A stretch of 63,947 nt of DNA, counting the filler, from Intoshia linei (lineage: Eukaryota; Animalia; Orthonectida), in the NCBI GenBank assembly GCA_001642005.1. It is 5 parts of 5 records of this genome, joined end to end, with 100 filler letters (N's around TTAATTAATTAA, not from the genome) between each part and the next. Parts side by side here need not be neighbours in the genome. Positions count along the whole stretch, not along the records: positions 1 to 20,173 come from LWCA01000697.1; 4 more parts are not named here. One strand, given 5' to 3'. Below the pieces are notes generated by a model. It ran no database searches and was not told the origin of the DNA. It saw nothing but the letters and a program-made list of their open reading frames with translations. Shown one piece after another: positions 1 through 20,173 of the stretch (within the stretch, counting starts at the first letter, position 1; each line of letters begins with the position of its first letter). Position numbers and translations under genes: made by a program.

Positions 1-729
1 AAATACAAAAGTTCAACCCGAGAAATCTACGCATTCCCGGTGAAAAATAATTTTAATACATAAAATGGCAAAAAGAAATCTGACATTCAGAAGCAAACAG
101 GCCATAAAGGTGAAGATGAGACGTCTCAATGATTCATCACATTGAAAATGACAAAATAGGTTTTTATAATTTTAATTGTAATTTCAAAAACCAATAACAA
201 AGTCACAACCTCAGCCAAAAAATCTATCCCTCAAAATATCTTACCGAAATCACTGATATACATTATGAATAATAAACAATACATGTATATGTGTTATCAA
301 AACAGTAGAGAGAAACTATGGGTAACATGATTCGGTATACAATCACGAGGGTCTACTACGTTTTTTATTTTAATTTATTAATAGGTAATAGAAAATTACA
401 TTTTTATGATGACCAATGTGGTTTCAAATTGTTATATTTCATTTTTAGACAATAAATAGTAAATAATAATAATGGATTCAATAATGTAAATTGTAGAATG
501 TATAGACGACCAATTTTTAAAAAATATTCTAGATGGGGCCTAAAAATGTCCATCTGAACAGGGCATATTGTTGACTCTCCACGTTCATGTGTGTTATATA
601 TACTTCATATAAAATATTTTGAAAATATAGAAATGCTAACAAATTTAAAATTTTAACCACGCATAGTTTAATATAATGATAAAAATTTAGTCATAGACTA
701 AAAACTATATCAAATAATTAATTAATAAT

Positions 730-3700
730 CTAATAATATATTACAGCATCAAAATTAAAAATGATGAATCCATCGGCATATGGACTAATGGTAATAATTC
801 GAACGTCCTTGAGACTATATTGTCGGCTAATTTTTAGGGATTTATTAGGATAAATAATACAAAGTAATGTTTCTCCAAGGAAAAGTAACTTTTCAGTATG
901 CTAAATATAAATTTTTAAAAGAAATTAAAAACTTAACCCTAATGCAATTTTCAACAATTTTGTGAACTAAAAGATCAGCTGAAAATATAATGTGTTCTTT
1001 TTTTAAATGGGTTTCATGTATTTGCTTTAAAGTTTCGATGGAGTTATCTTGTAAAATTGAATGCATTTCTTTATTTACATCGAACCATATTAATGGAGAA
1101 TCATCCACTTTATGATTCCATTTTTCATATGCTTCTTTACGGCCTTTTAAATAATCTATAGCTATACATTCGCACCGCATCAGTCCAATGTTTGAATTAT
1201 TGTCTTGAATACCCTTCAATTTGAGAAAATGTAGTTGAGATAAAATCTAAAGGTAAATATAAAATGAAAATGCAAATAAAACATTAAAACTATTACATTA
1301 AATTTTTAATCATAAATACCTTATTGCGTCGATATATTCGATACAATGTAGTTCTAGCCTCGGTAAATAATTTGCTTTTCAGTATGTTTTTGTCTATTTC
1401 TTCACTCTTTGTAGCTTCACGAAATTTTTTCAAAAATTTTCGAACCTTTATACAAACAATAAATAAATCAAATGTTATATTATATTATGACAAATAAGTT
1501 ACATTAAAGTATTTCCAAATATGAAAATATTCGGTTATAGATTTATTCACATAAAAGTCAATAAATTTTGATATCAAATGTACAATTTAATTTAAATCAA
1601 AAACATTTTTGATTTGATACTTAAAACAGTCCGCTCTTAACAGAGCTAGATACTGTTTGTGTCAAGTACGTAACTTTCAAGCTACATATAATATAGAATA
1701 TTAATATAGTTACGTTGTAATTCCAAATGAATTTGTAAATGGCTTTCGAAGCTGCTTCTTTTTTCTAAATTGGTTAAATTTACTTACATATTTTACTTGT
1801 TAATAATAAATCGAGGCAAATAAATTTAATATTGAAAACGTTTGGTTTATTTCTTATTTAGGGAAATTTCGTGGTGTAAACTTAGGGCCTTCCCAAATTT
1901 ACAAAAATGCGTATATCTCAAAATCTCTGGGCTATTAAACAAAATAAATTATACCGTGTTAATCAGCATATTGAACTTTTAAAATACAATTTAAACGTAT
2001 TTATATTGGTGTATTAATTAATAAAATCATGTCTACATATTATCTTATTATCCAATTTTGTTATTTTGGAAATTTATTCACGGTAAACAATTAAAATTAC
2101 CATTTATAAATATTTATATTTATTTTTTTATTTTCATTTGTAATTGCTCGATATTATCAAAAAATTATTACTAAAAAAAAATATTCAATGGTTAAAAATC
2201 CTAGAATTAAAAAAATTCTATTCTCATGAATTCAAACGCATTTTAAAATTTTACCAACCTTACATAGGGTATATAGGGATACATACTATATATGTTATAT
2301 AGATATATTATATAGGTTCGTATTTGTAAGAAGAAACTGGATCAATTTTATGTTAAGACGCGTCGAATGTTTAATAATTTGAATTAAAACGCTATTTATC
2401 TAACCATATATTTGACAAAATATTTGGTCTTAAAGACTTAAGTCCGAAAAGGTTTAAAACTTAATCTTAACGATATATTTTTATAAAATATAAATAACAG
2501 TAACATTTGCATTAAAATTTAAAAAAATCACATGAAACAATGTAGAATGTTGTCCAATATCGCCTGGTTAAATTATTAAAACCGCTTTTTAAATAAAATA
2601 TTAAATTTAATTAACCTCTGCAGAAGCTTCCTCGTTGATTTCAACTTGCTTGATTTCATCTTGTGTTGTAGATATCTCTAGAATCAATTTATTAAAAATT
2701 TTTTATTAATTTTAGAATTAATAGACGGATAAAAAAATTACAAGTGGTACAGTTGTATCCTGTTAATACACACAAAAAATTTTCAATCCGAATAAGTGAC
2801 GACTTCACTATCAAAAAAGCATTTTAGTATTCATATACTTTTTTTGGAAATATTTTATTAAAACAAAAAATGTAAAATAATTAACGGTCCGAAAATTAAA
2901 AAAATAAAAGAGATTTTTCTAATAGAGCTTATTCCAGTTTATATAAATACAAAATTTCAACCCCAGAAATCTACGCATTCCCGGTGAAAAATAATTTTTA
3001 ATATATTATCAACCAATATTTTTTAAATATTTCGATTAAAATAAAAATTAAAACATAAATATTCATCCTACAGTTTCAACAAAAATGTGCATTGAACGTC
3101 TACACATTTACAATACATATATGGGTGGAATTCGGTTTTTTTTCATTGCTAATTTCTTAACTAAACACCTTGTCCCCGGTCGATTGAATGGGCGCATTAA
3201 ATAGCACTGCAATCGAAATTTTGCAGACACCCGTTTTGAAATTAAACAAACTTACTTCTACAACTTTTAAGCAGGTTCCCAAATGTCGTGAACCCTCAAA
3301 ATTTTGAAAATTTAACGCTTTAATAAAAATACACTAATCTAATAAAAATTAAAACTATGTGGTCAGTACGGGGTCCGTTCGGACCCCTTTCGAAAGCGTA
3401 TTTTAACGTTTGTAAAATAAACCGAATTGAATAAAAAGATTTTACAACATGGATAAAAATTTATCGTTAAAACACTTCATCATCCTGTGAAAACCAGAAA
3501 TTAATACTATAGTATGAAATAAGAATAACCTGAAATCATTTCAAAATTTTTTTCGTTAGTTTCTTGGCTGCCATTCTCAGATTTCGATATTTTAGAATAT
3601 CTTTTATCTTCATTGAAACCAATTAATTCAAATGATTCAGAAGAAATTATTTCAATTTTTTCAAGTTCGCTGCTTGTATTGGTGGTTTTTTCAGTATCCT

Positions 3701-6700
3701 AAAGAAACTATATAAGATTTAACTAAATTTACATCATAATTGACAAGTATAGTAGGGTTCAGTTTTTTTGTTGCTATTTCGGTATCTTTTCCAGTCACAT
3801 TTCCATTTGCTCTTTCTAATGACCCTTTTGCAGTATCATTAGTTGAAGTATCCGCACTGCTACTAGTAGTTCGACTAAGCATTATCTCTAATTGTTCCAT
3901 TCGTTTCTGTTGACGGTTTTTTTCGCTTTCACTCTCATCTAAACTCTTCTTTACGACCAAGGTTTCCGTTTCTTGTATTATTTCAACTTGTTTAAGTATC
4001 GTTTTATCAACGTTATTTTCATTTTTATTTTGTTTTATTATTTCTATATTATCCCTGCAGGTAGCACTAGTTAAAATAGCGTTGTTCTGTTCTTTATCTG
4101 CCAGTTCGTTTGAAAAACGTTCGATAATTTCAATTGTTTCTTCCATCTCTGTGATAGAATTTTTTATATAATTTGCGTTTTTTTTTAGTTTTTCATTTTC
4201 CTCTTCTTCGCTCCTTTGTTTTTCGTCTTCTACTTGATCATTTGTATCCTTGTCATCAATTTTATTTTTATTTGAACTGGAACTGGAACTACTACTGGTA
4301 TCATCATTTTTATATTTTTTAGCTTTTTTATCATTTAGCTCACTTTGAACTTTTAATTCTTTATTATGTACAATTATTGGCAATTTAGTTGAGGTATTTT
4401 CTTTTTTGAAAAAATTATCACTCGAAAATATTAGTAAACTCTCAGATTCATCGTTCATTATATTGGTATTATATCTCTTTGAATGTCTATGAGGTGTTTC
4501 ATTTTTTATAATTTCATCATTTTTAACTGCTATACTTTTTCGAACATTGACATTGACATTTCTCAATCCGGTTGGTGAATTAATTCTAAATATTTAAATT
4601 ATTTACAGTGTTAATTAGCCGTGAATAATTCTTAAAAATATCTTAAAATTCTTAAAAATGAACCAAAAATTAAATAATTAATATTAAAATATATTTATAC
4701 ACAATTTTTAGTAATATAAAATTATTGTAAAAGTTATTGTATAATATATTACTGATATTCAGTTTCAATCATTATTTTGTATATTTGGGTTATATTTAAA
4801 ATAACTTGTGGTGAATGTCAAATATATGAAAATACACGATAATTATTTCTTATTTACATAGTATATTATATGTCTAATATCATATATTCTTATTAAGGAA
4901 ATATCAATAATTAATTCATAATGTCAACAAATATCACGATATTATCACCTATCTAACTTTTTGAATTATGTAAATTATTAAATTAAATTTTTTAAAAGAA
5001 TTTGACAATTCTATGATATAGTCGAAAAAAAATATTTTTAATATTTTTGAATCTTTCAATACATTCCAAGTATAATCAATAGAATTTACAAGTAAATGTA
5101 GAAATTAAAGTACATGTATATTTAACAGTCAATATTAAAAATTTGCAATGAAATGATAAAATATATTATGTAATAAAATACTTTTGAGATTTCGAAAATT
5201 TTCTGGTAGATATCTTTTTAATTGGAACAATGCTTTCCTTGTAATCCTAATTAAAGTATATATATTAAATTTATTGTTATTGTATTGTATTTTTGCTGGA
5301 AAATTTTCAAATGTCTAAATTTTACAAAAATTGTAGTCAAGTTGAAGACACTTTATATCTATTAATATATTTTAAATTCAATGTAAACTTAAGTTTCTTA
5401 TCCATTTGAGAACTAGTATTATACGAAATGTTAAATACAAGTATATTAATGAATTTAAAAATACGTTATAGAAAAATATGTGAGTGGAGTGGGTCGAATC
5501 GTACAAAGTAGAAAATCCTTCAACGGTATCCTATTATACAATTTTATTAATTTTAAATCATTATTAATAATTCGAATAATTTAATATATATGTTACAGGC
5601 AAAATTTGAATAATTGAAAATTGCCTGGATTTGAATTTTGCCTGCGTGTAGCAGGAAATTTTCAAATTATAAACGTTGTATTCAATTTCAATTGATGTAA
5701 AACATTAAGCGTTGATAATTATTTGGAATATTATGAAAGACTGAAAAAATTAGAAAATAATGTAAATTAACCCAGAATAAAAAATGATTGGAACATTTTG
5801 AACAAGTATTATTTCAATTTTGCTTACACTCATTAATATTAAATTAGGTACGAATTGATAGCTGAATTGATAAATTAAATTTTCAAATTCGAATTATTAT
5901 TCACGTTGCTTGTCAAAATTTGAAAATTGCCTGTAACATATACAATAATAATATAAGATAACAATGTAAAATATATTTTTTAAAAAAATAATAAAATAAT
6001 CACGTATAATTATATGTGTGGAGGGATCAAGTTACTATTTTTCATATCAACATTTTACTGATACGAATTAAAAAAAATTCAAGAATCTGTAAAAACCAAA
6101 CTTAATACTCACATATAAAAATAAACACTTTAGAATACTTTGACAAATAAATAAGAATAAACATGATAATGGTTTTATAAAATTTTCGATGAATTTCATC
6201 AAAACCTCAAAAATACATTTTCTTGTGTAATTATAAAATTTTCGACAAAATTGTGGGATTATTAAAAATGATAACGGTTTTTGACAGGACCCAGCTCTGC
6301 CGAGGGCACATTTTTATTATACTTAAAAAATTAATTCACGTTGAAAATCTAATTTAAAAATGCTAATATTACTCTATTACTAAGCTCTATCAGAATAATC
6401 TTTTTTTTTAATTTTCGGACGATTAATTATTTCATATTTTTTGTTTTAATAAAATATTTCAAAAAAAAAAAAAATATGAATACTAAAATGCTTTTTTGAC
6501 CGTGAAGTCGTCACTTATTCGGATTGAAATTTTTTTAAATTATAGGGCTGTTTTCATTAAAAAAAGAAGGGTAATTTGGGTTTTGGCCCTGAAGGTATAA
6601 TTTTTTTAAATTTAAGTTTATTATAATTTTTATGATTTTAAAATCCGTAAAATCGTAAGATGTGAATTTGGGAAGATGAAATTATGTTTGCAAACACCCC

Positions 6701-9700
6701 CGAAAAAAAACTGTAATCGAAATGTGGACTTTATAAAATTCTAAGACGGGTAGTTATTTAAATAAAGCTAAACACACACACAAACAAAAATCGCTTAGCA
6801 TATTATATAAGTTAGGATTTTATGACATAACGGTTTTTTCATATTTTTTTATGAATCTCGATAATATTTTAAAAATCCAACTTTTTGAAAAACCAACAAT
6901 TTTGGTTTTATAATAAAAAATTTTAAAAAAAAATTTGAAAAATCAAATTATGAACGTAGAGAAAGTCTCATAAAAGCAATTTAGATTTTTTTAGGATAAT
7001 GATAACGCCTTTGTAGCCCCTTAATTAAACATTTTTTTAAATGTGTTTCTTTTTAATTGGGTTTTTTTGGATTATATTTATATTGTTAGTGTAACACTAT
7101 TATTAACAATGTAAACTAAAATTGGTGTAAAACGACCGAGGAACATGTGTGATATGATGAAAATTCATACTTTTAAATGAAAACAAGATGAGTATTTTGG
7201 ATTTCGTTGAGAAACTAAAATAAATATTTTATTACATGGTATATTAAATAAATTAATTAACATATAGGACATATATACATATATATGTATAAATATAGAT
7301 TTTCTCTATTTATATAGTCATGTTTGTATTTGATATAGTCATGTTTGCATTTAATATGGTCATATTTGATTTTAATATAGTCATTATGTTTATTATTAGT
7401 CATAGTAATTATGACTATATTAAATTCAAATATAACCATATTAAATGCAAATATGACTATATCAAATACAAATATGACCTTATTTAGTGCAAACATGACT
7501 ATAAATAGAGAACATCTATAATACCAATAAATGATATACATAATGAATAATAATTATTAGTATACATACCCAATTGGCTTATATGGTCGTTTTTAGAAGA
7601 TTTTAAAATTTTAATTAATTCTTCCAAATTTAACCGATAGTTTGAATCGCAAAAATGATCGAGTTTGTAATCAACCTATTTAAAAATGATTACATAATGT
7701 AATATTAATATTAATATAAATTTATAATAAAATATATGGACAATGACATACCTTTGAAATATTATGAACAATAGTTATCTTGAAATGTTGTACAAACATG
7801 TCCAACTTATTAATGTTTAATTTGGATGATTTAATTTCATAAAAATCTTTAAAAATACTCTCGGCTGAATTTTGATTGATCTGGTTGTTTTCAATGATTT
7901 GAAACATTCCATTTTCACCTTCATATATATTAATTAATTCATCAATGTTTATTTTGTCTTCTTTCGACTAAAATGATAATATTTATTATTTATTAAAATT
8001 TTTGATTGTCGTGATTATAATTTACTTTGTAATAATTTTGGACTAATTTTTCAAATTGATAATTCATAATATATTCCATAAATCCATTTTTCTACAAAAA
8101 TGACAGTTTTAATTTTAAATTGGAATATTACTGAATCAGCACGATTCATAAATCCTGGACTATTGCATATGGACAAACAAGTCGAGGTTTCTTTATTGTA
8201 ATTGTATTTTTTCTAATAAATAATATAATACCTTAGACACATAATAATGTAGTATTACAAATTATTAATAGCAGTCAACATGATATTAAATAAAAAATTA
8301 CATCCATGAATGTATTTATTCCATTAAATATAGAATCCAGAACGCAATTGTAAATATAATGACAAATTTGATCTCTGGCAACGTTGAACTGTACATGAAA
8401 TAATATTAAATATTTTTATAATTTTATTAAACTTTTTTATGAGTTTCAATGTCATCCATAAGCTTTATAATTTTCAAAATATTTTCTTCTGACAATCCAA
8501 GGTGCATAGAAGCGTTATTTATTACTAAAATACAATATTATAAACATAAAAAGTGAGTCTATTTTTTTCCTCTTATGGTTTTTAAGTAGATCCCAAATAA
8601 AAAAGTTTTTTTAAACACTATATTTGTTTTCATACATTTTGATAATAGTACCGGTCCTGTTAAATGACATTTGAGTAAGATAAATTGGTAACTTTATAAT
8701 AAAATAAAATAACCATAATCTTGAATTTCTACAGCGTCTTTATTATTCAAATTTGTCATGTTTAATATTGTTGACAAACAGTGCAGAATGTTGCGAACAT
8801 TACCATCATTGAAACCAAAATAATGTAACGATTCCTACATAATAAAAATAAATAATTTAAATTATAAATTTTAAATGTTAAAATTTTAACAGCCAATGAT
8901 CAACGGAAACATTATTTAATAATATCTAATATTAAATACTTACAATAACATTGTCAATCAAATTATTATCAGTTTTAGTTCGGCTATGACATTTCAAAAT
9001 TTCGTAATGAGAAATATTGGTGTACAACATGTAAATCTCTAGGAATTAAATTATAAAAATTTTAAATTGAATAAATAATAATTACGAAAGTCACTTTCAC
9101 ATGCATTTCGAATTATATGATAAAATATATCAAAATTGGCATTATTTATATTGCTTGATGTTAACATACACTAAAATTAATAAATTATTATCGTTATATT
9201 TAATTTTTTATTATTATAAAATGTAATATTTACTTGATTCATATAATCTAAAAAATTATAATTACATTTTTAAACTGTAATTCAATTAAATTAACAAATA
9301 ATAAATAAGGAGCATGATGATGTACTAAAATTTACGTTTTTTTATTTGCAAAGAAATTGGTTTATCCTCATTATACATAATGTCGATAGATTTCAACTAA
9401 TAACATTAATTAATTTTTTCATGTGTATATTAAAATATTTTAGAATTTAAGATATATTTTTCTAAATTTGTTAAATTTTACCAGTTGATTAATGTTTCGA
9501 TCCGTCTCATTTGAAGTAGTGGTAAAAGCTACAAATTTAATTATGTCAATATAATACGCTTACCGTTCAAAATCGTAAATAAATGATTTATTAAAGCATC
9601 ATCTACCGAATTTTTTGTTAGGTATTTTATACACGTTTGCATATATACTAAAAATGTAAACATTAATTTTATTTTAATATTATTTACAAATTTCATAATA

Positions 9701-12700
9701 AAACTATCCGCTTTAAAAAATTCACATATTCTCGAATGGAAATGACTTATAAAATGCGAATACGGGCAATTTTACGGGTGATTATTTACTTTTTTTATAA
9801 ATGAGTTGGTTTTTAAAAAAGGGTTACAAAATAATATCTTAACAGACTTTAAAACCTTCAAATTGAATTCATAAAAAAACACATAATCAAGTAGAATAAT
9901 TTGTGAGATAAAATAAAATTTGTTATGGACCTCGCACAATTTCTTGGTCCCAAATTTGATTTTTTTCTTATGACCATGGGAAAGCGGTTTTACATAGTAC
10001 AATAGTGTTTTCCAAATGCTTTTTGCTAGTGAATTTTAAATGTGTCACGACATTTTGAAAATGTATTACATTATTTTTCATACTTTTGTATTGTAAATGT
10101 TAAATTTAAAAAATTTATAGATAAACTAAACCATTTTGAGATCTGAAATCATTTGCGTTGTTAAAACATTGGGGTGACACATTTTTAGGAAATTTTGAGC
10201 ATTAGATGGGAAATTACTACTAAATGTGTATATTTTTAAAATACAAAACGATTTCATAATCAACTCCTTTACTAGACCTACAATCGTATCGTTGTTGACA
10301 CGTGATCCATGGTAGGAAAAGTTTGGGAACCACTGTTATAGGTAAAGCGGCAATTTTAAGATAAAACTTTGTTCTTTCGGTACAAAAATAAAAAAAAACT
10401 ATTATAATGCACTACAGCCAGTTGTTCCATAATATGGTTACTACTCCAATGGTTTCATAACTGTACACCTGGTATCCGTTAGACTCAAATAAAATATAAA
10501 CAAAAAATTTATTTACTTTTGTTTATTTTTATAGGAGAATTGTTAATATTTATTAAAGTCTCCAGATGTTAGTCATTTCATTCATTTTTCCAATTTGAGC
10601 ATTTAAAACAATTAATTTTTCAAATATGTTAATAGGAGGTTGGAATTAAACCATAAAAATTATTTAAAATACAACAAATTAATTGGATTAAGAAAAATTA
10701 TTGCAATTTATTGGTTTTTTGTAAAATTCGCATTATTAATAGTTTATTTACATGCTAATTTCATTTCCATTATTTTCAACTCTGATCATAACTTTTAATT
10801 GTATCAAATGTAAAAGGTAACTCCAGATCAGTAATGATGTACCTGGGTATATGACATTATTCGTCGTTTGCGAATTTTTTCTCAGAAAATAATCATAATT
10901 TCATTACATTTCGAGATTTAAAGTTCACCGAGGATTGTATGTGCGATAGCCGTCAAATTTTCAATTTTATACCCAGTCTTGTTTCATACATCTTCAATTT
11001 TATCAATTAATGGTTCTGAAAAATCAAAAATGCACACAGCCATCAGAAAAGGTAGACACGTATAAAATTTACTTATTATTCTCAAGTATGATGGATAGGT
11101 AGGTAGGCTGGAATGCTAAAAATGTTTTAGTATTTCAAACATAAAATTTTACCTTTGACATTCTCAAAAAGAAAAACACAATTATAACAGTTATACAGTC
11201 ATTAGTTACTAATGAATGGCATATTGCTTTAATAATCTAAGTCTGCTATTTTTAATTTAAGAATTAATTAAATATTTTTCAAACATGATTCATCATCATG
11301 ACTCATGAATCAAAATAAATTGGAAAATTGAAATAGTAAAATTAGTTCAGCAGTTTCTAAACGCCGATCAGCGGATCAGTACCGGTACTTGAAGTAATTT
11401 TACTGGTCCGTAGAAATTTTTTTTGAAAATTGAAATAGTCACACCTCCCAATACTGCCCATCCTCAATATTACCTTTATATTTCAATTTTATAACAAGAA
11501 ATATAATATCAATTTATAATAAAGAAAATTTCTCATTACGGTTAAACTCTCAAGTTTAAAGTATTTTAAAAAAAATTTCAAAAAATTTAAACAGTTATTT
11601 ATTTTTTAATTTTATTATTTAAATTTAATATAAATTAAATCCTTAAATTAAAATCATAAATATTTTAATATGAACTGTTATTATAGAAATTATTAATCCA
11701 ATTTTAATTATAACTTATAAACTTATAAACCCCAATTAAATTTACAAACAAATACATGCACATTAAAAAACGGACTTCATTCTATCATTATTTTACTACA
11801 GTGAAATCCGCTTATACGAGAAACCGGTTATAAGAAACGTCCGGATATAAAAACCAAGATCCGCTTATAGTGGACAGGCAATTTGTTTTTTAAAATGAAT
11901 ATTTAAGATTTTTTTAAAATAAATAAACCCTAAAACCTAAACTTATAAGCTCTCTTGCGTCTCTTATAAGCGGATTCCACTGTATATGAAAACTTAGTAA
12001 TACATAGTAACTGTATCCATGATCTATTTGCTACAACGTTATACTTTCAATAACGCCATAAATATCGAAAAACCAAAATGGCGGTAGTGAGAGGTCTGAC
12101 TGTAGAATAAATATAATAAATAAATTTATATTATAATATTCGATAATTATCGTATTTTCTTAAATTTTTTTTAGTTATTTCTTTTTAGTGGTACGTGCGA
12201 AATTGCATAGTAAATTTCCTATCGTGGTGACAAAATGTGAAAACTCCTGAATTAGTTGAATCATGCAGATTAATTTTGAAAAATCTGTACTTATTTACAT
12301 CTTTATAGCTCTGGGTTTCGACTAGTGCAGGCTATCAATAAAAATGTTTCTATAAATTTATCTATTCTTATTCTATTTACTTATATCTATTTATATTGTT
12401 ACTATTTTTTTAAATCAAAATGTTTTATCAATTAATTTTGAGAAAAAGTTAGAGATTCTTTCAAAACAGAGGACGATAAATTATCATAAGATACATTAAT
12501 ATTATTTTTTGTTGATTGCCACCCTAGTTTCAAACTATGTAACGTTAAAATTTGAATATATTGAATTTACACTACAAAAGTGTTTCTAAAAGTTAATATG
12601 GACCCTTTGCTGATACCTATGTTCATAGAAACTACCATAATCTTTTAATGATGTGATTAAATTCATGCGGTAATAAATGAATCTATTTTTATATAAAATA

Positions 12701-13013
12701 TAACATGATAATGGATTACACTCTTGATTTGATCCAAATTGCCCCAATAGTAAAATCTGTTCTTTTTTCGATTGGCAAAGTCTATTTTTAATGACATCCA
12801 ATTTATTTTTCCTAAAAATAATTAAAATTGCTCAAAACAGTTTTTACATAAGGTCATTAAAAGTTTTTTCCATATTAATATCAATTTCATCGTCTTTCAT
12901 TAAAACGACAATCGAATCGTCACTTATACACTAGAAATAAATGTATTTAAGGCAACTAATTGTACTTTTATATTTTCTTCGCCCATTAGCGTCCTTCGCA
13001 TTTTAGTATCCAT
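730..13013 (-). CDS. Highly divergent class-I-like myosin (degenerate motor, low-complexity insert, IQ-like motif, TH1 tail); multi-exon, with the splice path through SH1/converter/neck and the 3' end unresolved
   Basis: Spliced GT-AG exons are colinear with the myosin motor: EQILLLGQFGSNQE/LYMQTCIKYL (P-loop region), AFTTTSNETDRNINQL/LKSIDIMY (switch I), NANFDIFYH (~ERNYHIFYQ), ESLHYFGFNDGNVRNILHCLSTIL, ARDQICHYIYNCVLDSIFNGIN, CLSICNSPGFM..NGFMEYIMNYQFEKL (switch II/relay), IDELINIYEGENGMFQII, VDYKLDHFCDSN..LIKILKSSKN. Tail: IDKN..LYRIY, DYLKGRKEAY, IIFSAD..KLLFL..RQYSLKDVRIITISPYADGFIIF (TH1-like). ATG at 13013. Confidence 0.85.
2735..3110 (+). mobile_element. Internal fragment of a non-autonomous Helitron-like repeat family
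   Basis: Shares blocks (AATAAGTGACGACTTCAC, TAGAGCTTATTCCAGTT, ATCTACGCATTCCC) with copies at 1-58, 6290-6817, 20274-20370 and 27930-28723. Confidence 0.75.
5591..5938. mobile_element. MITE with TGTTACAGGCAA terminal inverted repeats
   Basis: TGTTACAGGCAA at 5591 and TTGCCTGTAACA ending at 5938, both flanked by TATA; lies in a myosin intron. Confidence 0.75.
6290..6817 (-). mobile_element. Non-autonomous Helitron-like element (5' end intact)
   Basis: On the minus strand it begins A|TCCTAACTTATATAAT, followed by a TGTTTGTGTG microsatellite; the body matches the other family copies; imperfect GC-rich hairpin near 6290. Confidence 0.7.
7294..7520. mobile_element. Small foldback MITE with 21-bp modular inverted arms
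   Basis: Left arm TATAGATTTTCTCTATTTA followed by (TATAGTCATGTTTGCATTTAA)n; the right arm is its reverse complement, ending TAAATAGAGAACATCTATA. Confidence 0.8.
10776..10856 (-). pseudogene. Possible Helitron/PIF1 helicase remnant
   Basis: Translates as CHIPRYIITDLELPFTF-DTIKSYDQS, resembling the PIF1 motifs IPRI..SDxELPF and TINKSQGQS with an internal deletion; bounded by stop codons. Confidence 0.4.
11348..12249. mobile_element. hAT-type non-autonomous element with a perfect 8-bp TSD
   Basis: Ends CAGCAGTTTC...AAAACTCCTG; TSD AATTAGTT at 11340-11347 and 12250-12257. Confidence 0.85.
11799..11982. mobile_element. pogo/Tigger-type MITE nested inside the hAT element
   Basis: TA|CAGTGAAATCCGCTTATA...TATAAGCGGATTCCACTG|TA. 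Confidence 0.85.
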
Positions 13014-15095: not shown

Positions 15096-15455
15096 ATGGA
15101 CGAAAATTATATGATAAATATGCAAAACCATATAATAACATCATTGTATGGCCACTACAAGACTGCAAAGGTGCAACTGATAGATCAATCAGAAACAATC
15201 GAAAAAGAAACGATTAATATGAACAACTATCAAAATTTTATGACAATAAACTCTGATAAAATCAAAAATTGTACATTGTACATAAATAGTGCCACTCGTT
15301 TGGATGGTAATGTCAATAAGAAAAGATACTTGAATCAATGGCTGGAAAGCACGGTAGAAGAACACCTGCGAAAATGCCAAGAAACTAAAAAATTGAAAAA
15401 AGATGAAGACACACAAATAACTAACCATTCGATCGAGAAAATACTTAAAATGTGA
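15096..15455 (+). CDS. Hypothetical 119-aa single-exon protein
   Basis: ATG-initiated ORF in AAAATGG context with coding-like composition; AATAAA at about 15485; no family recognised. Confidence 0.5.
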   Translation: MDENYMINMQNHIITSLYGHYKTAKVQLIDQSETIEKETINMNNYQNFMTINSDKIKNCTLYINSATRLDGNVNKKRYLNQWLESTVEEHLRKCQETKKLKKDEDTQITNHSIEKILKM

Positions 15456-16080: not shown

Positions 16081-17365
16081 CTACCTGAAAACCAATTTTT
16101 CAGTATCAACAAGTCCATCTTTATATCGGTATAGGTAAGCAGTCATATTTGTTTCCGTTTTTTTTGTAGCAGCTATATCCAGTAGTATGAAAGAAGCAAT
16201 TACAGTCTTGCTAAAAATAGTAAAATTAAAATTAGTAAATTAACTTTAATAAGATATTTTCAGTATTGCTAAAATTTTAATAGGGGTAAACCTTACGTCA
16301 CTTATTAATCATAGTCAACTTTTGAAGAAAAACTATTCGATCCAATGAACTCACTAAACTAAACCATTACATCTGTAATGGCGGGGGGCAAGGTACAGAA
16401 AGAATATGAATTTATTCAACACGAGCCAACTACTGACGCTCACAAGAAAATCGTATTTCATGTGTGTAGTTGCATGTTACAATCCCAATCTCGGTGAGGC
16501 TAAACGTATTTAGCATTCCTCTCGGAAAAGTTAAATATACCCGATGACCAAGGTTAAACAATCCATTCAAGAATTAAACAATTGACTTCTATTTTATAAT
16601 AATTCAATAATAAAAATTAATAAAGAACGTGAAACAGAATCATAACTTTTTTAATTTGTTAAATTTTTCCATGAAATAGAAAATAATTTTAATTTCTCGG
16701 GACCCGGTTGAGAAACGTCTCATCCAGAGTAAAAATTAAGCAGGACATAAGGTATATAAAATTTATTTTCTAATTCAATAAAATAGGTCAAAATAAAATA
16801 CAATTAGACTAACTATAAAGTACCCATTCAAAAAAGAAGTCCCAGTAGCTGAACCAGGATTTAAATAAATCTTTCCATGTGAAGTGTAGGCGTAACATTC
16901 AGTATTATTTCCCGTTATAACCACATCACAGTCCATGTCAACATTCATTAGTTTAATTTCCATGCAATTATTAACAGGACATGTATTATGACCGTGAAAT
17001 ATTCCGAATTTAAGTCCTTGAATTGTAGTTACAAGACTATCGCTTATGGATGGAAGCCTCTACAAAAACGCAATTATATATATATTTATAAAGTCAGGAT
17101 TTCCAATTTTTAAAATGATTACATAAACTAGAGAGTCGTAATCACCAAATGAACCACACAAATTGAGATTAACTCTTCTGAGATCATTCAGAGTGGATTC
17201 AGAGCAAAAATTTCCAGTACATATGATACGATTAATTTTTTTTGATTTCAACAGTCCCTTAAAAGCTAAAGGTATATCTGTTGTAAGCAACGGTATGTTG
17301 AAATCACCGATAACCAGAATAAACTAAATTAATATTTTAAATTTTTAAAACGCTCAACCAACCAT
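16081..17365 (-). CDS. VPS29: VPS29-like retromer subunit (divergent), 4 exons
   Basis: ATG-only first exon; M/FILVIGDFNIP..IICTGNFC..GDYD..FGIFHGH..DVVITGNNT..YLNPGSATG..SFILLDI..AYLYRY..EKLVFR* aligns along the whole of VPS29. Confidence 0.92.
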
Positions 17366-19549: not shown

Positions 19550-20173
19550 ACATTTTAAATAAGCTTTAAAGAAAGATTTATCTCTACACGCTTACAAAAT
19601 TCAATTGACTCAAGAAATCAAGCCTGCTGACCATTTGAAGCGTCGTACGTCGCAGATTGGGTGCATGAGCAAAAACAAATCGATGATGATTTTTCACAAA
19701 ACCATTTCCATCTAAGTGGCTTCATTAATAAGCAGAATTGTCGCTTTTGGGCTAATGAAAATCCAAGGATAATTGCTGAAAAACCGATGCATCCATCCAA
19801 GGTCTCTGTTTGGTGTGCATTTTTTGCTGGCGGAATAATTGGACCGTTTTTCTTCGAGAATGATGCCGGCAATTCTGTTACTGTGATAGGCGAGAGATAC
19901 CGTGCCATGATAACCAACTTTTTTTCCCTAAATTGAATGCTATAGATGTCAAGAATTTGTGGTTCCAACGTGACTGCGCAACATGCCACACAGCCAATGC
20001 AACAATGATTTTTTTGAAGGAGAAATTCTCAGGTCGCATCATCTCTTGAAACAGCGAAGTGGGTTGACCAGCAAGATCGTGCGATTTGACGACTCTGAAT
20101 TTCTTCCTTTGGGGTTACCTTAAGAGTAAGGTCTATGCCAACAAGCCGACAACAATTGAACAGCTGAAGGATG
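19550..20173 (+). pseudogene. IS630-Tc1-mariner transposase remnant, rosa/DD41D-like, truncated by the gap
   Basis: HAYKIQLTQE, FHLSGFINKQNCRFW, VWCAF..GIIGPFFF, WFQRDCATCHTA, ARSCDLTTLNFFLWGYLKSKVY; contains frameshifts and stops. Confidence 0.9.

What the first reader, a model, noticed from the sequence alone, without database searches (positions are those of the whole stretch)
730..13013. Candidate class-I pseudo-myosin: all three nucleotide-sensing motifs are degenerate but the motor fold and TH1 tail are kept
Seen: more than a dozen small exons, mostly invisible in the ORF track, splice in frame into a colinear myosin motor. The P-loop GESGAGKT reads GQFGSNQE (12721-12744; Lys and Thr lost, gap-free alignment through LYMQTCIKYL). 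Switch I NxNSSRFG reads DRNINQLL (9482-9528 plus the next exon). Switch II DIxGFE reads NSPGFM (8147-8164). Both partners of the Arg-Glu salt bridge needed for hydrolysis are therefore gone. Known: catalytically dead myosins are described in classes 18 and 20, and TH1 is the lipid-binding tail of class I. Inference: this is an ATP-independent actin-membrane tether or scaffold derived from myosin I, a combination I do not know to be described. Intact frames and splice sites across the motor argue against simple decay.
Basis: partly seen in the sequence, partly recalled or inferred. Interest (0 to 1): 0.9.

Follow-up and report, generated by a model that had tools for sequence, protein, structure and literature searches.

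The report
Eroded, ATPase-dead myosin-I relic gene
A gene of the parasite Intoshia linei, filed in databases as a protein of unknown function, is a badly eroded descendant of a class I myosin motor that has lost every ATP-binding motif but still looks like a coding gene; this is a new, still unproven case of a motor turned into a non-motor protein.

Summary
The contig is from the orthonectid Intoshia linei. On the minus strand, 16 small exons (13013-7570) join in frame through canonical GT..AG introns. They are colinear with a myosin motor.

NCBI annotates most of the gene as hypothetical protein A3Q56_04973 (928 aa), with no Pfam hit even at E 10. Homology shows only with sensitive methods:
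- hhalign against a motor profile gives z about 8 against shuffles.
- ESM Atlas gives a Myosin_head fold for residues 1-345 (TM 0.74-0.79).
- ESM Atlas gives Myosin_TH1 for residues 730-928.

- The stretch with the purine-binding loop is gone.
- The region of the cardiomyopathy loop is about 9 residues short.
- The converter and SH1/SH2 third is unrecognisable.
- About 384 residues of acidic low-complexity sequence sit before IQ-like helices and a partial TH1.

The actin-contact elements look degraded, so an actin tether is speculative. Codon periodicity and intact phases argue for a coding gene rather than an old pseudogene. No RNA data and no ortholog could be found. I read it as a non-catalytic myosin-I derivative of moderate interest.

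The parts
12966..13013 (-). E1: proposed first exon, with the ATG at 13013 (16 codons). It is not in the NCBI model.
   Evidence: donor GTACAA, then a 35-nt intron. Coding-potential score 8.7. No homology support of its own.
12848..12930 (-). E2: relic of the N-terminal myosin-I motif (..DDSIVVL..INMEKTF..).
   Evidence: By eye it is like the Intoshia class I exon ..TDDMVML..IVDNLKKR. The pairwise score is not significant.
12720..12811 (-). E3: the strand before the P-loop plus the P-loop relic GQFGSNQE (12744-12721). The exon ends in phase 1.
   Evidence: The Lys and Thr of GESGAGKT are replaced by Gln and Glu. The spacing to E4 fits the family, but the exon has no significant score of its own.
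9648..12719 (-). Intron 3, 3072 nt. It holds dispersed-repeat copies at about 10454-10584 and 11680-12132.
9564..9647 (-). E4: the helix after the P-loop (L YMQTCIKYL..FTILN). The NCBI model starts at its Met (9642).
9482..9528 (-). E5: AF..., then the switch I relic ..TDRNINQL.
   Evidence: There are 14 residues between 'AF' and the 'LKSIDI' of E6, the same as ILEAF-14-GKYIDI in canonical myosins.
9336..9396 (-). E6: LKSIDIMYNEDKPI.., homologous to GKYIDIxF... The NCBI model skips it.
   Evidence: hhalign places it at profile 335-347, P 0.04. Against the class I exon z is 3.1. The intron at SSRF|GKY is shared with contigs C121 and C2208.
9234..9247 (-). E7: a 14-nt micro-exon (H)YMNQ. The NCBI model skips it.
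   Evidence: canonical AG and GT, and the phase fits. No other support.
9086..9170 (-). E8: ..NANFDIFYHII.., homologous to ERNFHIFYQ.
   Evidence: z 8.0 against the Intoshia class I exon, 0 of 3000 shuffles. hhalign places it at profile 362-381.
8944..9038 (-). E9: upper-50K segment.
   Evidence: It lies inside the significant hhalign stretch, protein residues 54-162.
8714..8834 (-). E10: ..FGFNDGNVRNILHCLSTILNMTNL.., homologous to the ..LHLGNI.. helix.
   Evidence: hhalign P 5e-4 at profile 423-468. It was the best HMM hit of all pieces in the window.
8433..8524 (-). E11: ..ASMHLGLSEENILKII..; the stretch that should carry the cardiomyopathy loop follows and is about 9 residues short.
8302..8388 (-). 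E12: ..ARDQICHYIYN..SIFNGIN.., homologous to RDALAKxIY..WIVxxIN. The NCBI model skips it.
   Evidence: hhalign places it at profile 515-536. Canonical 44- and 89-nt introns flank it.
8132..8212 (-). E13: the switch II relic NSPGFM (8164-8147).
   Evidence: It lies 9 residues before the NGF of E14, against 7 in canonical myosins.
8026..8091 (-). E14: the start of the relay helix, KNGFMEYIMNYQFEKLVQ.
   Evidence: hhalign places it at profile 567-583, P 0.07. Its best match in the genome is the class I exon NGFNQLCINYVNEKLQQ.
7752..7967 (-). E15: lower-50K segment of 72 aa (..NGMFQIIENNQINQNSAES.. ..FKITIVHNISK).
   Evidence: It is 100% identical to residues 223-294 of P0121. phmmer against the PDB aligns it to the myosin-Va motor.
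7570..7675 (-). E16: VDYKLDHFCDSNY..ILKSSKNDHISQL, homologous to V.Y..GFLEKN..LL..S.
   Evidence: hhalign P 0.006 at profile 678-712. z 4.7 against the class I exon of contig C2270. Its intron position is shared with contigs C2270, C1207 and C309.
7171..7214 (-). Link exon of the NCBI model (VSQRNPKYSSCFHLK); possibly the segment after loop 2.
   Evidence: The second hhalign hit runs into it. Weak.
5182..5246 (-). Link exon of the NCBI model (22 aa), with no homology support.
   Evidence: It is a gene-finder prediction only.
3733..4585 (-). Long exon of 284 aa: acidic, Ser/Asn/Lys-rich, low complexity.
   Evidence: The frame is open for 300 codons. Coding score 101. Periodicity p 2e-15. The frame is open for about 45 codons before its first Met, so it is an internal exon. 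No match elsewhere.
3530..3698 (-). The low-complexity region continues (56 aa).
2616..2677 (-). Short acidic exon (20 aa).
1320..1445 (-). Basic helices that look like IQ motifs (VRKFLKKFRE.. ..LYRIYRRNK).
   Evidence: By eye only. Pfam finds nothing in this piece. The Atlas structure alignment to myosin IG and IA starts at residue 733.
938..1246 (-). TH1 exon a (103 aa; ..LKGRKEAY.. ..IIFSADLLVHKI..).
   Evidence: ESM Atlas: 20 of 30 hits are Myosin_TH1, score 0.92, 184 shared features. A 37-nt intron follows.
749..900 (-). TH1 exon b (..KLLFLGETLLCII.. ..ITISPYADGFIIFNF). The NCBI model reads on past the GT at 748 to a stop ending at 730.
   Evidence: Pfam Myosin_TH1 E 0.0047, 17 bits, profile positions 58-108 of 185, below the cut-off of 31.1.
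405..553 (-). Possible further TH1 exon (MDIFRPHLEYFLKIGRLY..), reached through a 195-nt intron with a CAG acceptor.
   Evidence: and a comparison by eye with the TH1 of contig C2270. No Pfam hit. Unproven.

Best explanation
This is a single-copy gene of Intoshia linei (NCBI hypothetical protein A3Q56_04973, here with extra 5' and internal exons). It descends from a class I myosin and is no longer a motor.

Shown:
- Colinear remote homology to the motor, from the N-terminal motif to the loop-2 region.
- A TH1-type tail.
- Replacement of all catalytic residues: P-loop K,T become Q,E; switch I S,S,R become I,N,Q; switch II D,E become N,M.
- Loss of the stretch that holds the purine-binding loop.
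- No recognisable converter or lever part.
- An insert of about 384 residues of acidic low-complexity sequence.
- Canonical splice sites and matching phases.
- Codon periodicity like that of real Intoshia genes.

Inferred:
- The protein cannot bind or hydrolyse ATP or produce a stroke.
- If it is made, it acts as a passive scaffold. A remnant of the upper and lower 50K body is joined by a long disordered acidic linker to basic IQ-like helices and a PH-like TH1 module, which could place it at membranes.
- Actin binding is doubtful. The Phe-Pro tip of the helix-loop-helix motif reads Asn-Gln, the region of the cardiomyopathy loop is shortened, and loop 3 was not found.
For: - Identity: the exon at 7752-7967 retrieves P0121 at 100% identity, named. 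P0121 maps only to this contig.
- Motor homology: hhalign z about 8 and a colinear chain of 63.8 against 18.5 +/- 6.4 in shuffles; six exons at their expected profile places; E8 z 8.0 and E16 z 4.7 against Intoshia class I exons; the best four phmmer hits in the PDB are all myosin-Va motor at the homologous place; the ESM Atlas fold has TM 0.74-0.79 to Myosin_head models.
- Tail: Pfam TH1 E 0.0047; Atlas 20 of 30 hits TH1, and TM 0.54-0.55 to myosin IG and IA.
- Motifs.
- Coding state: 15 canonical introns with fitting phases; periodicity chi2 60, p 4e-11; G at codon position 1 is 0.21 and A at position 2 is 0.46, against 0.26 and 0.43 in canonical myosin ORFs and 0.14 and 0.33 in stop-free non-exon controls; a 300-codon open exon.
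- Intron positions shared with canonical Intoshia myosins.
- Short introns fit the species' median of 57 bp (PMC6543705).
Against:
- No ortholog or paralog, so no dN/dS.
- Pfam sees nothing in the whole protein.
- Exons E1-E5 have no statistical support of their own.
- The link exons between motor and tail are gene-finder predictions.
- Six long introns are full of dispersed repeats, which is unusual for this compact genome and would also fit decay.
- Splice sites can be picked with some freedom in DNA that is 75% A+T.
- AlphaFold2 on the single sequence gave no usable model.
Confidence: 0.6

Rival explanations
1. It is a decaying pseudogene, or a gene in the last stage of loss. A redundant class I myosin copy lost function, took up repeats in its introns and lost exons. 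The annotated protein is not made, or has no function.
For: - All catalytic motifs, the exon with the purine-binding loop and the converter region are lost.
- Long introns are laden with repeats in a genome whose median intron is 57 bp (PMC6543705).
- No homolog was found anywhere.
- No Pfam hit.
- Orthonectids are known for massive gene loss (PMC6543705).
Against: - The sequence has diverged to about 20-25% identity, yet it keeps 24 exons with canonical sites and fitting phases.
- It has a 300-codon open exon.
- Its codon-position composition is close to that of real genes and far from stop-free controls.
- Neutral decay over that span would have destroyed these features.
Confidence: 0.28
2. 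One reading: an ATP-independent tether between actin and membrane, with the motor fold kept, which binds actin in a rigor-like way and binds lipids through TH1.
For: - The architecture is motor remnant, then IQ-like helices, then TH1.
- There is a precedent in Drosophila myosin-18, which does not bind ATP and binds actin regardless of ATP (PMC3122231).
Against: - The fold is not whole: about 45-50 N-terminal core residues are missing and the C-terminal third is unrecognisable.
- The region of the cardiomyopathy loop is about 9 residues short.
- The helix-loop-helix tip reads NQ where FP is expected, and loop 2 is shortened.
- Only about 60% of TH1 is seen.
- One of the two basic PH signature positions appears replaced; this is an alignment by eye from memory of Myo1c and is unverified.
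Confidence: 0.12
3. The locus holds two transcription units. One is a short motor-remnant gene (13013-7570). The other is a separate gene for the acidic region plus TH1. The gene finder joined them wrongly.
For: - The two link exons (7214-7171 and 5246-5182) have little or no homology support, and they lie 355, 1924 and 596 nt apart across repeats.
- There are no RNA data.
Against: - The 284-aa exon is open for about 45 codons before its first Met and starts at a good acceptor, so it looks internal.
- The strand is the same and the order of motor, IQ and TH1 is the ancestral one.
- hhalign extends weakly into the first link exon.
Confidence: 0.15
4. It is a chance resemblance in A+T-rich DNA. 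There is no myosin here, and the tail region belongs to something else, for example a deoxynucleoside kinase.
For: - There is no Myosin_head hit in any exon or in the whole protein.
- A weak dNK hit, E 0.0012, falls on 896-1246.
Against: - hhalign against shuffles, colinear exon hits, E8 at z 8, and two independent ESM Atlas searches by features and by structure all point to myosin head and TH1.
- The dNK hit covers only profile positions 151-193, is below the cut-off, and has no partner exons.
Confidence: 0.02

Closest known systems
Class I myosins (for example Myo1c, or Intoshia's own canonical class I gene on contigs C121 and C2270)
   Same: - The order of parts is the same: N-terminal motif, motor, basic IQ-like helices, TH1 tail.
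- Several intron positions are shared with other Intoshia myosin genes, including the class I gene on C121 and C2270, though not only with class I.
- Exons E8 and E14 find their best match in the genome in the class I gene.
   Different: - No P-loop, switch I, switch II or purine-binding loop.
- No recognisable converter or SH1/SH2 helices.
- An acidic insert of about 384 residues lies between motor and tail.
- It falls below every Pfam threshold.
Drosophila myosin-18 and class XVIII myosins (PMC3122231)
   Same: A myosin whose motor neither binds nor hydrolyses ATP, and which was proposed to act as a passive actin-binding tether.
   Different: Myosin-18 keeps a complete motor fold that Pfam detects. 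It belongs to another class, with a PDZ domain or KE-rich N-terminus and a coiled-coil tail. Its actin binding has been measured. Here the fold is partial, the tail is TH1, and nothing has been measured.
Pseudo-motors of the kinesin superfamily (Costal2/Kif7, KIF26, VAB-8). This comparison is from my own knowledge and was not checked here.
   Same: They are motor-derived proteins kept as scaffolds after loss of catalytic motifs.
   Different: They belong to a different superfamily. Those proteins are conserved across species and have known partners. This one is so far known from a single species.

Membership tests
Myosin motor domain (Pfam PF00063 Myosin_head) | The sequence matches the family profile above the curated cut-off. 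| tested here: not met
   No hit for any exon, for the contig in the genome-wide scan, or for the 928-aa protein at E up to 10.
Myosin motor domain (Pfam PF00063 Myosin_head) | Remote homology or fold of the motor core (upper and lower 50K). | tested here: met
   hhalign P 3e-4, z about 8 against shuffles. The ESM Atlas model has TM 0.74-0.79 to Myosin_head models over 303-329 of 345 residues.
Myosin motor domain (Pfam PF00063 Myosin_head) | P-loop GESGAGKT. | tested here: not met
   It reads GQFGSNQE at 12744-12721. There is no Walker A anywhere in the contig.
Myosin motor domain (Pfam PF00063 Myosin_head) | Switch I NxNSSRFGK. | tested here: not met
   It reads DRNINQL-LK, with the same spacing to the AF and the GKY-like residues.
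Myosin motor domain (Pfam PF00063 Myosin_head) | Switch II DIxGFE. | tested here: not met
   It reads NSPGFM at 8164-8147. Only the Gly-Phe is kept.
Myosin motor domain (Pfam PF00063 Myosin_head) | The purine-binding loop (NPxxxxxxY) and the IYTYIG strand. | tested here: not met
   Only a 36-nt intron lies between E2 and E3, where Intoshia's class I gene has a whole exon for this stretch.
Myosin motor domain (Pfam PF00063 Myosin_head) | HW helix, SH1/SH2 helices and converter. | tested here: inconclusive
   No hit by HMM or hhalign to profile positions after about 735. Only faint resemblances by eye. They could be lost or beyond recognition.
Myosin motor domain (Pfam PF00063 Myosin_head) | Actin-activated ATPase. 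| not testable with these tools
   This needs recombinant protein.
Class I myosin | TH1 tail domain (PF06017). | tested here: inconclusive
   Pfam E 0.0047 but 17 bits, below the cut-off of 31.1, and only profile positions 58-108. ESM Atlas features (0.92, 184 shared, 20 of 30 hits) and structure (TM 0.54-0.55) support TH1. Pairwise comparison with Intoshia's own TH1 is not significant.
Class I myosin | IQ motif or motifs between motor and tail. | tested here: inconclusive
   Basic helices at 1445-1320 look IQ-like by eye. Pfam finds nothing in that piece.
Class I myosin | The motor groups with class I in a phylogeny. | not tested
   No full-length class I sequences were at hand, and the sequence is too divergent. 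The only hint is that E8 and E14 score best against the class I gene.
Processed or decayed pseudogene | Frame shifts, in-frame stops, or loss of splice signals. | tested here: not met
   All 24 exons have AG and GT and fitting phases. The coding periodicity is retained. Introns are present, so it is not a retrocopy.

The most novel reading that the evidence does not exclude
Orthonectids keep, under selection, an expressed class-I-derived 'pseudomyosin'. A motor remnant that cannot bind nucleotide is used only as a binding surface. It is tied by a long acidic disordered linker to a membrane-binding TH1 module. This would be the first pseudo-motor of class I, and a far more eroded one than myosin-18.
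Probability: 0.2. Interest if true: 0.7.

Novelty: new variant of a known kind. Interest (0 to 1): 0.5.

Why it matters
Dead motors kept as scaffolds are known for kinesins and for myosin-18, but not for class I myosins, and not with this degree of erosion. If the protein is made, it shows how much of a myosin head can be lost while the gene survives. It would also give a natural minimal fragment of the head for study.

It also shows that standard annotation misses such relics. Pfam, BLAST and phmmer called this a protein of unknown function, whereas profile-profile comparison and language-model or structure searches recover its origin. For orthonectid biology it adds one case to the record of reduction in a highly simplified parasite.

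The weight of the finding is limited. It is known from one species, with no expression data and no ortholog.

Tried and rejected
- Pfam, exon by exon and on the whole protein: nothing for the motor. This shows extreme divergence, not absence.
- Genome-wide Myosin_head and TH1 scans did not touch this contig.
- A class VII-based HMM on all pieces gave only marginal hits. A shuffle test on the whole HMM was weak: 2 of about 1900 shuffles reached the real score.
- The dNK reading of 896-1246 was rejected: a partial hit below the cut-off, with no partner exons.
- The look-up of encoding contigs with the 119-aa ORF at 15096: not on record.
- The look-up of sequencing runs found one run of unknown kind and no RNA.
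Those places were sent to no tool afterwards; I searched 9700-11550 and 11680-12700 beside them.
- The search for homologous proteins with P0121 found only itself. With the 284-aa exon it found nothing.
- AlphaFold2 on the single sequence gave mean pLDDT 34.8 and was not used for a fold search.
- Pairwise tests of E2-E5 and of the TH1 exons against Intoshia class I exons were not significant.
- Pfam on the neighbouring VPS29-like and mariner-like pieces gave no hit at E 0.01.
Full-length analyses used the database protein P0121. My extra exons were treated one by one, and the frame check was done by arithmetic on phases.


Full report
**Source.** The piece (window 1-20173) is contig C229 of a 41.6-Mb assembly in 3520 contigs, with about 25% G+C. 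A long myosin ORF on another contig of the same assembly is 100% identical to an NCBI protein of Intoshia linei, an orthonectid. That species has short introns, with a median of 57 bp (PMC6543705).

**The observation.** Three-frame print-outs of the minus strand show a chain of small exons separated by tiny introns. I fixed the coordinates and checked phases exon by exon. E1 (13013-12966) to E16 (7675-7570) are 16 exons and 1378 nt. Each is flanked by AG and GT (mostly TTTAG and GTAA or GTAT). The carried phases fit and there is no stop. The introns are 35, 36, 3072, 35, 85, 88, 63, 47, 109, 189, 44, 89, 40, 58 and 76 nt.

- 12744-12721 encodes GQFGSNQE.
- 8164-8147 encodes NSPGFM.
- E5 (9528-9482) ends ..DRNINQL, and the next exon supplies L.

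No canonical Walker A, switch I or switch II string exists in any frame of the contig. No alternative exon on this contig can therefore supply them.

**Is it really a myosin?** Standard tools say no.
- Pfam finds no Myosin_head in any exon.
- The genome-wide Myosin_head scan found 41 exon hits on other contigs and none here.

A search of 1.8 billion representative proteins with exon E15 returned a 928-aa protein at 100% identity (P0121). It is NCBI 'hypothetical protein A3Q56_04973 [Intoshia linei]', with no domain on record. Pfam finds nothing in it even at E 10. phmmer against the PDB gives only E 0.29-0.78, but the four best hits are all the myosin-Va motor at the homologous place.

Sensitive methods settle the question.
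- hhalign of residues 1-345 against a motor profile scores 39.3 (P 3e-4). I built that profile from the class VII myosins.
- A second colinear hit scores 24.5. In 150 shuffles the top score was 17.1 +/- 2.7, maximum 23.6. The colinear chain scores 63.8 against 18.5 +/- 6.4.
- Exon by exon, E6, E8, E10, E12, E14 and E16 each find their expected place in the profile, in ascending order.
- Against exons of Intoshia's own class I myosin, E8 has z 8.0 (0 of 3000 shuffles), E16 has z 4.7 and E6 has z 3.1.
- In the ESM Atlas, for residues 1-345, 25 of 30 feature hits are Myosin_head. The Atlas's own model aligns to Myosin_head models at TM 0.74-0.79 over 303-329 residues.

**The tail.** For residues 730-928, 20 of 30 Atlas hits are Myosin_TH1 (score 0.92, 184 shared features). 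The model aligns to the tails of myosin IG and IA at TM 0.54-0.55. Pfam gives TH1 at E 0.0047 on exon 900-733, which is below the cut-off.

**Limits of the motif readings.** E1-E5 have no significant score of their own.
- Switch I is secure by position. E4 and E5 are in the annotated protein, and they lie 35 and 85 nt from the supported exon E6. The spacing AF-14 residues-LKSIDI equals the canonical ILEAF-14-GKYIDI.
- Switch II lies 9 residues before the supported relay-helix exon E14.
- The P-loop relic depends on E3 being spliced across a 3072-nt intron. The NCBI model does not do this; it starts at the Met of E4. Either way, no functional P-loop exists.

**What is kept and what is not.** The NCBI model maps to the contig as. 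It omits E1-E3 and skips E6, E7 and E12, which homology and short canonical introns support. It probably reads through the last donor.

Several parts of a myosin head are missing.
- Between E2 (N-terminal motif) and E3 (strand before the P-loop) there is only a 36-nt intron. Intoshia's class I gene has the exon TYIG..NPF..IY and ..PPHIFA there. About 45-50 core residues, including the purine-binding loop, are therefore gone.
- Between E11 and E12 the stretch that carries the cardiomyopathy loop is about 9 residues short.
- The tip of the helix-loop-helix motif reads NQ where FP is usual.
- Loop 2 is about 10 residues short.
- After ..SSKNDHISQL nothing matches the HW helix, the SH1/SH2 helices or the converter. 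A weak extension into the first link exon is the only trace.

In their place come two short link exons that rest on the gene finder alone. After them lie about 384 residues of acidic, Ser/Asn/Lys-rich sequence with net charge -13. Then come IQ-like basic helices (by eye only) and TH1 up to profile position 108 of 185. A further TH1 exon at 553-405 is possible but unproven. 'Motor fold kept' is therefore only partly true.

**Gene or pseudogene?** Several things favour a coding gene.
- There are 24 exons with canonical sites and fitting phases, despite about 20-25% identity to myosins.
- One exon is open for 300 codons. It is also open for about 45 codons before its first Met, so it is an internal exon.
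- Codon periodicity in the motor exons is strong (chi2 60, p 4e-11).
- G at codon position 1 is 0.21 and A at position 2 is 0.46. These are close to canonical Intoshia myosin ORFs (0.26 and 0.43) and unlike stop-free non-exon pieces (0.14 and 0.33).
- Intron positions are shared with canonical myosin genes.

Several things favour decay.
- The catalytic and structural elements listed above are lost.
- Six long introns are laden with repeats.
- No paralog, ortholog or fragment was found anywhere.
- There is no RNA evidence. I did not send those places to any tool afterwards.

I put a maintained coding gene at about 0.6 to 0.65 and a pseudogene at about 0.3.

**Mechanism.** ATP binding and hydrolysis are excluded as far as sequence can tell. 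There is no Lys/Thr in the P-loop, no Ser/Arg in switch I, no Asp/Glu in switch II and no purine-binding loop. A lever-arm stroke is excluded if the converter is gone.

The most likely role, if the protein is made, is a passive scaffold placed at membranes by the TH1 module. The head remnant would then serve as a binding surface. Actin binding is doubtful. The closest functional precedent is Drosophila myosin-18, which does not bind ATP and binds actin regardless of ATP (PMC3122231). That protein keeps a complete and detectable motor.

**Verdict.** The 'pseudo-myosin' label is fair. The 'fold kept' claim and the 'actin-membrane tether' idea overreach. I rate it a new variant of a known kind, of moderate interest, until expression or an ortholog is shown.

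Noticed in passing
window 6400-6820, with an inverted partial copy at 2774-2905: A very abundant dispersed repeat of about 420 nt. The first look found 3697 candidates in the genome, and the scored copies are 74-93% identical. It lies inside a long intron of the gene. The two copies flank the exons of the acidic insert in inverted orientation.
   Followed up: partly
window 7305-7511: A foldback element with 76-nt arms that are 91% complementary. It lies in the intron after E16 and also occurs on contig C1486. It creates a spurious 94-98-aa open frame on both strands.
   Followed up: partly
window about 10454-10584 and about 11680-12132: Two further dispersed-repeat families (375 and 110 first-look candidates) inside the 3072-nt intron. 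They explain why that intron is so long for this genome.
   Followed up: partly
window 1-54 and 2945-2998: A 54-nt direct repeat, 96% identical. One copy sits at the very start of the contig.
   Followed up: no
window 9642-730 (NCBI model A3Q56_04973 = P0121): The public gene model seems incomplete. It starts at an internal Met, skips three exons supported by homology (9396-9336, 9247-9234, 8388-8302), and ends by reading into an intron.
   Followed up: yes
L002 / contig C910 (P0001): The NCBI protein named 'Class I unconventional myosin, partial [Intoshia linei]' is really like myosin VII. Its best hits are myosin VIIa, and it carries MyTH4-type Pfam domains.
   Followed up: partly
contigs C121 and C2270 (L025, L021): The canonical class I myosin of this genome lies in pieces at contig ends: a 5' half on C121, and a 3' half with TH1 on C2270. 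They may be one gene split by the assembly, or two genes.
   Followed up: no
window 16778-17290, minus strand: Exons that by eye encode a VPS29-like protein (..RIICTGNFC.., ..YLNPGSATG..). Pfam gave no hit at E 0.01 on the single exons.
   Followed up: partly
window 19563-20173, plus strand: By eye, a fragment of a mariner/Tc1-type transposase (..FWANENPRII.., ..WCAFFAGGIIGPFFF..) that runs off the end of the contig. Pfam gave no hit at E 0.01.
   Followed up: partly
Nothing was laid, and the places were left out of all later searches.
   Followed up: no
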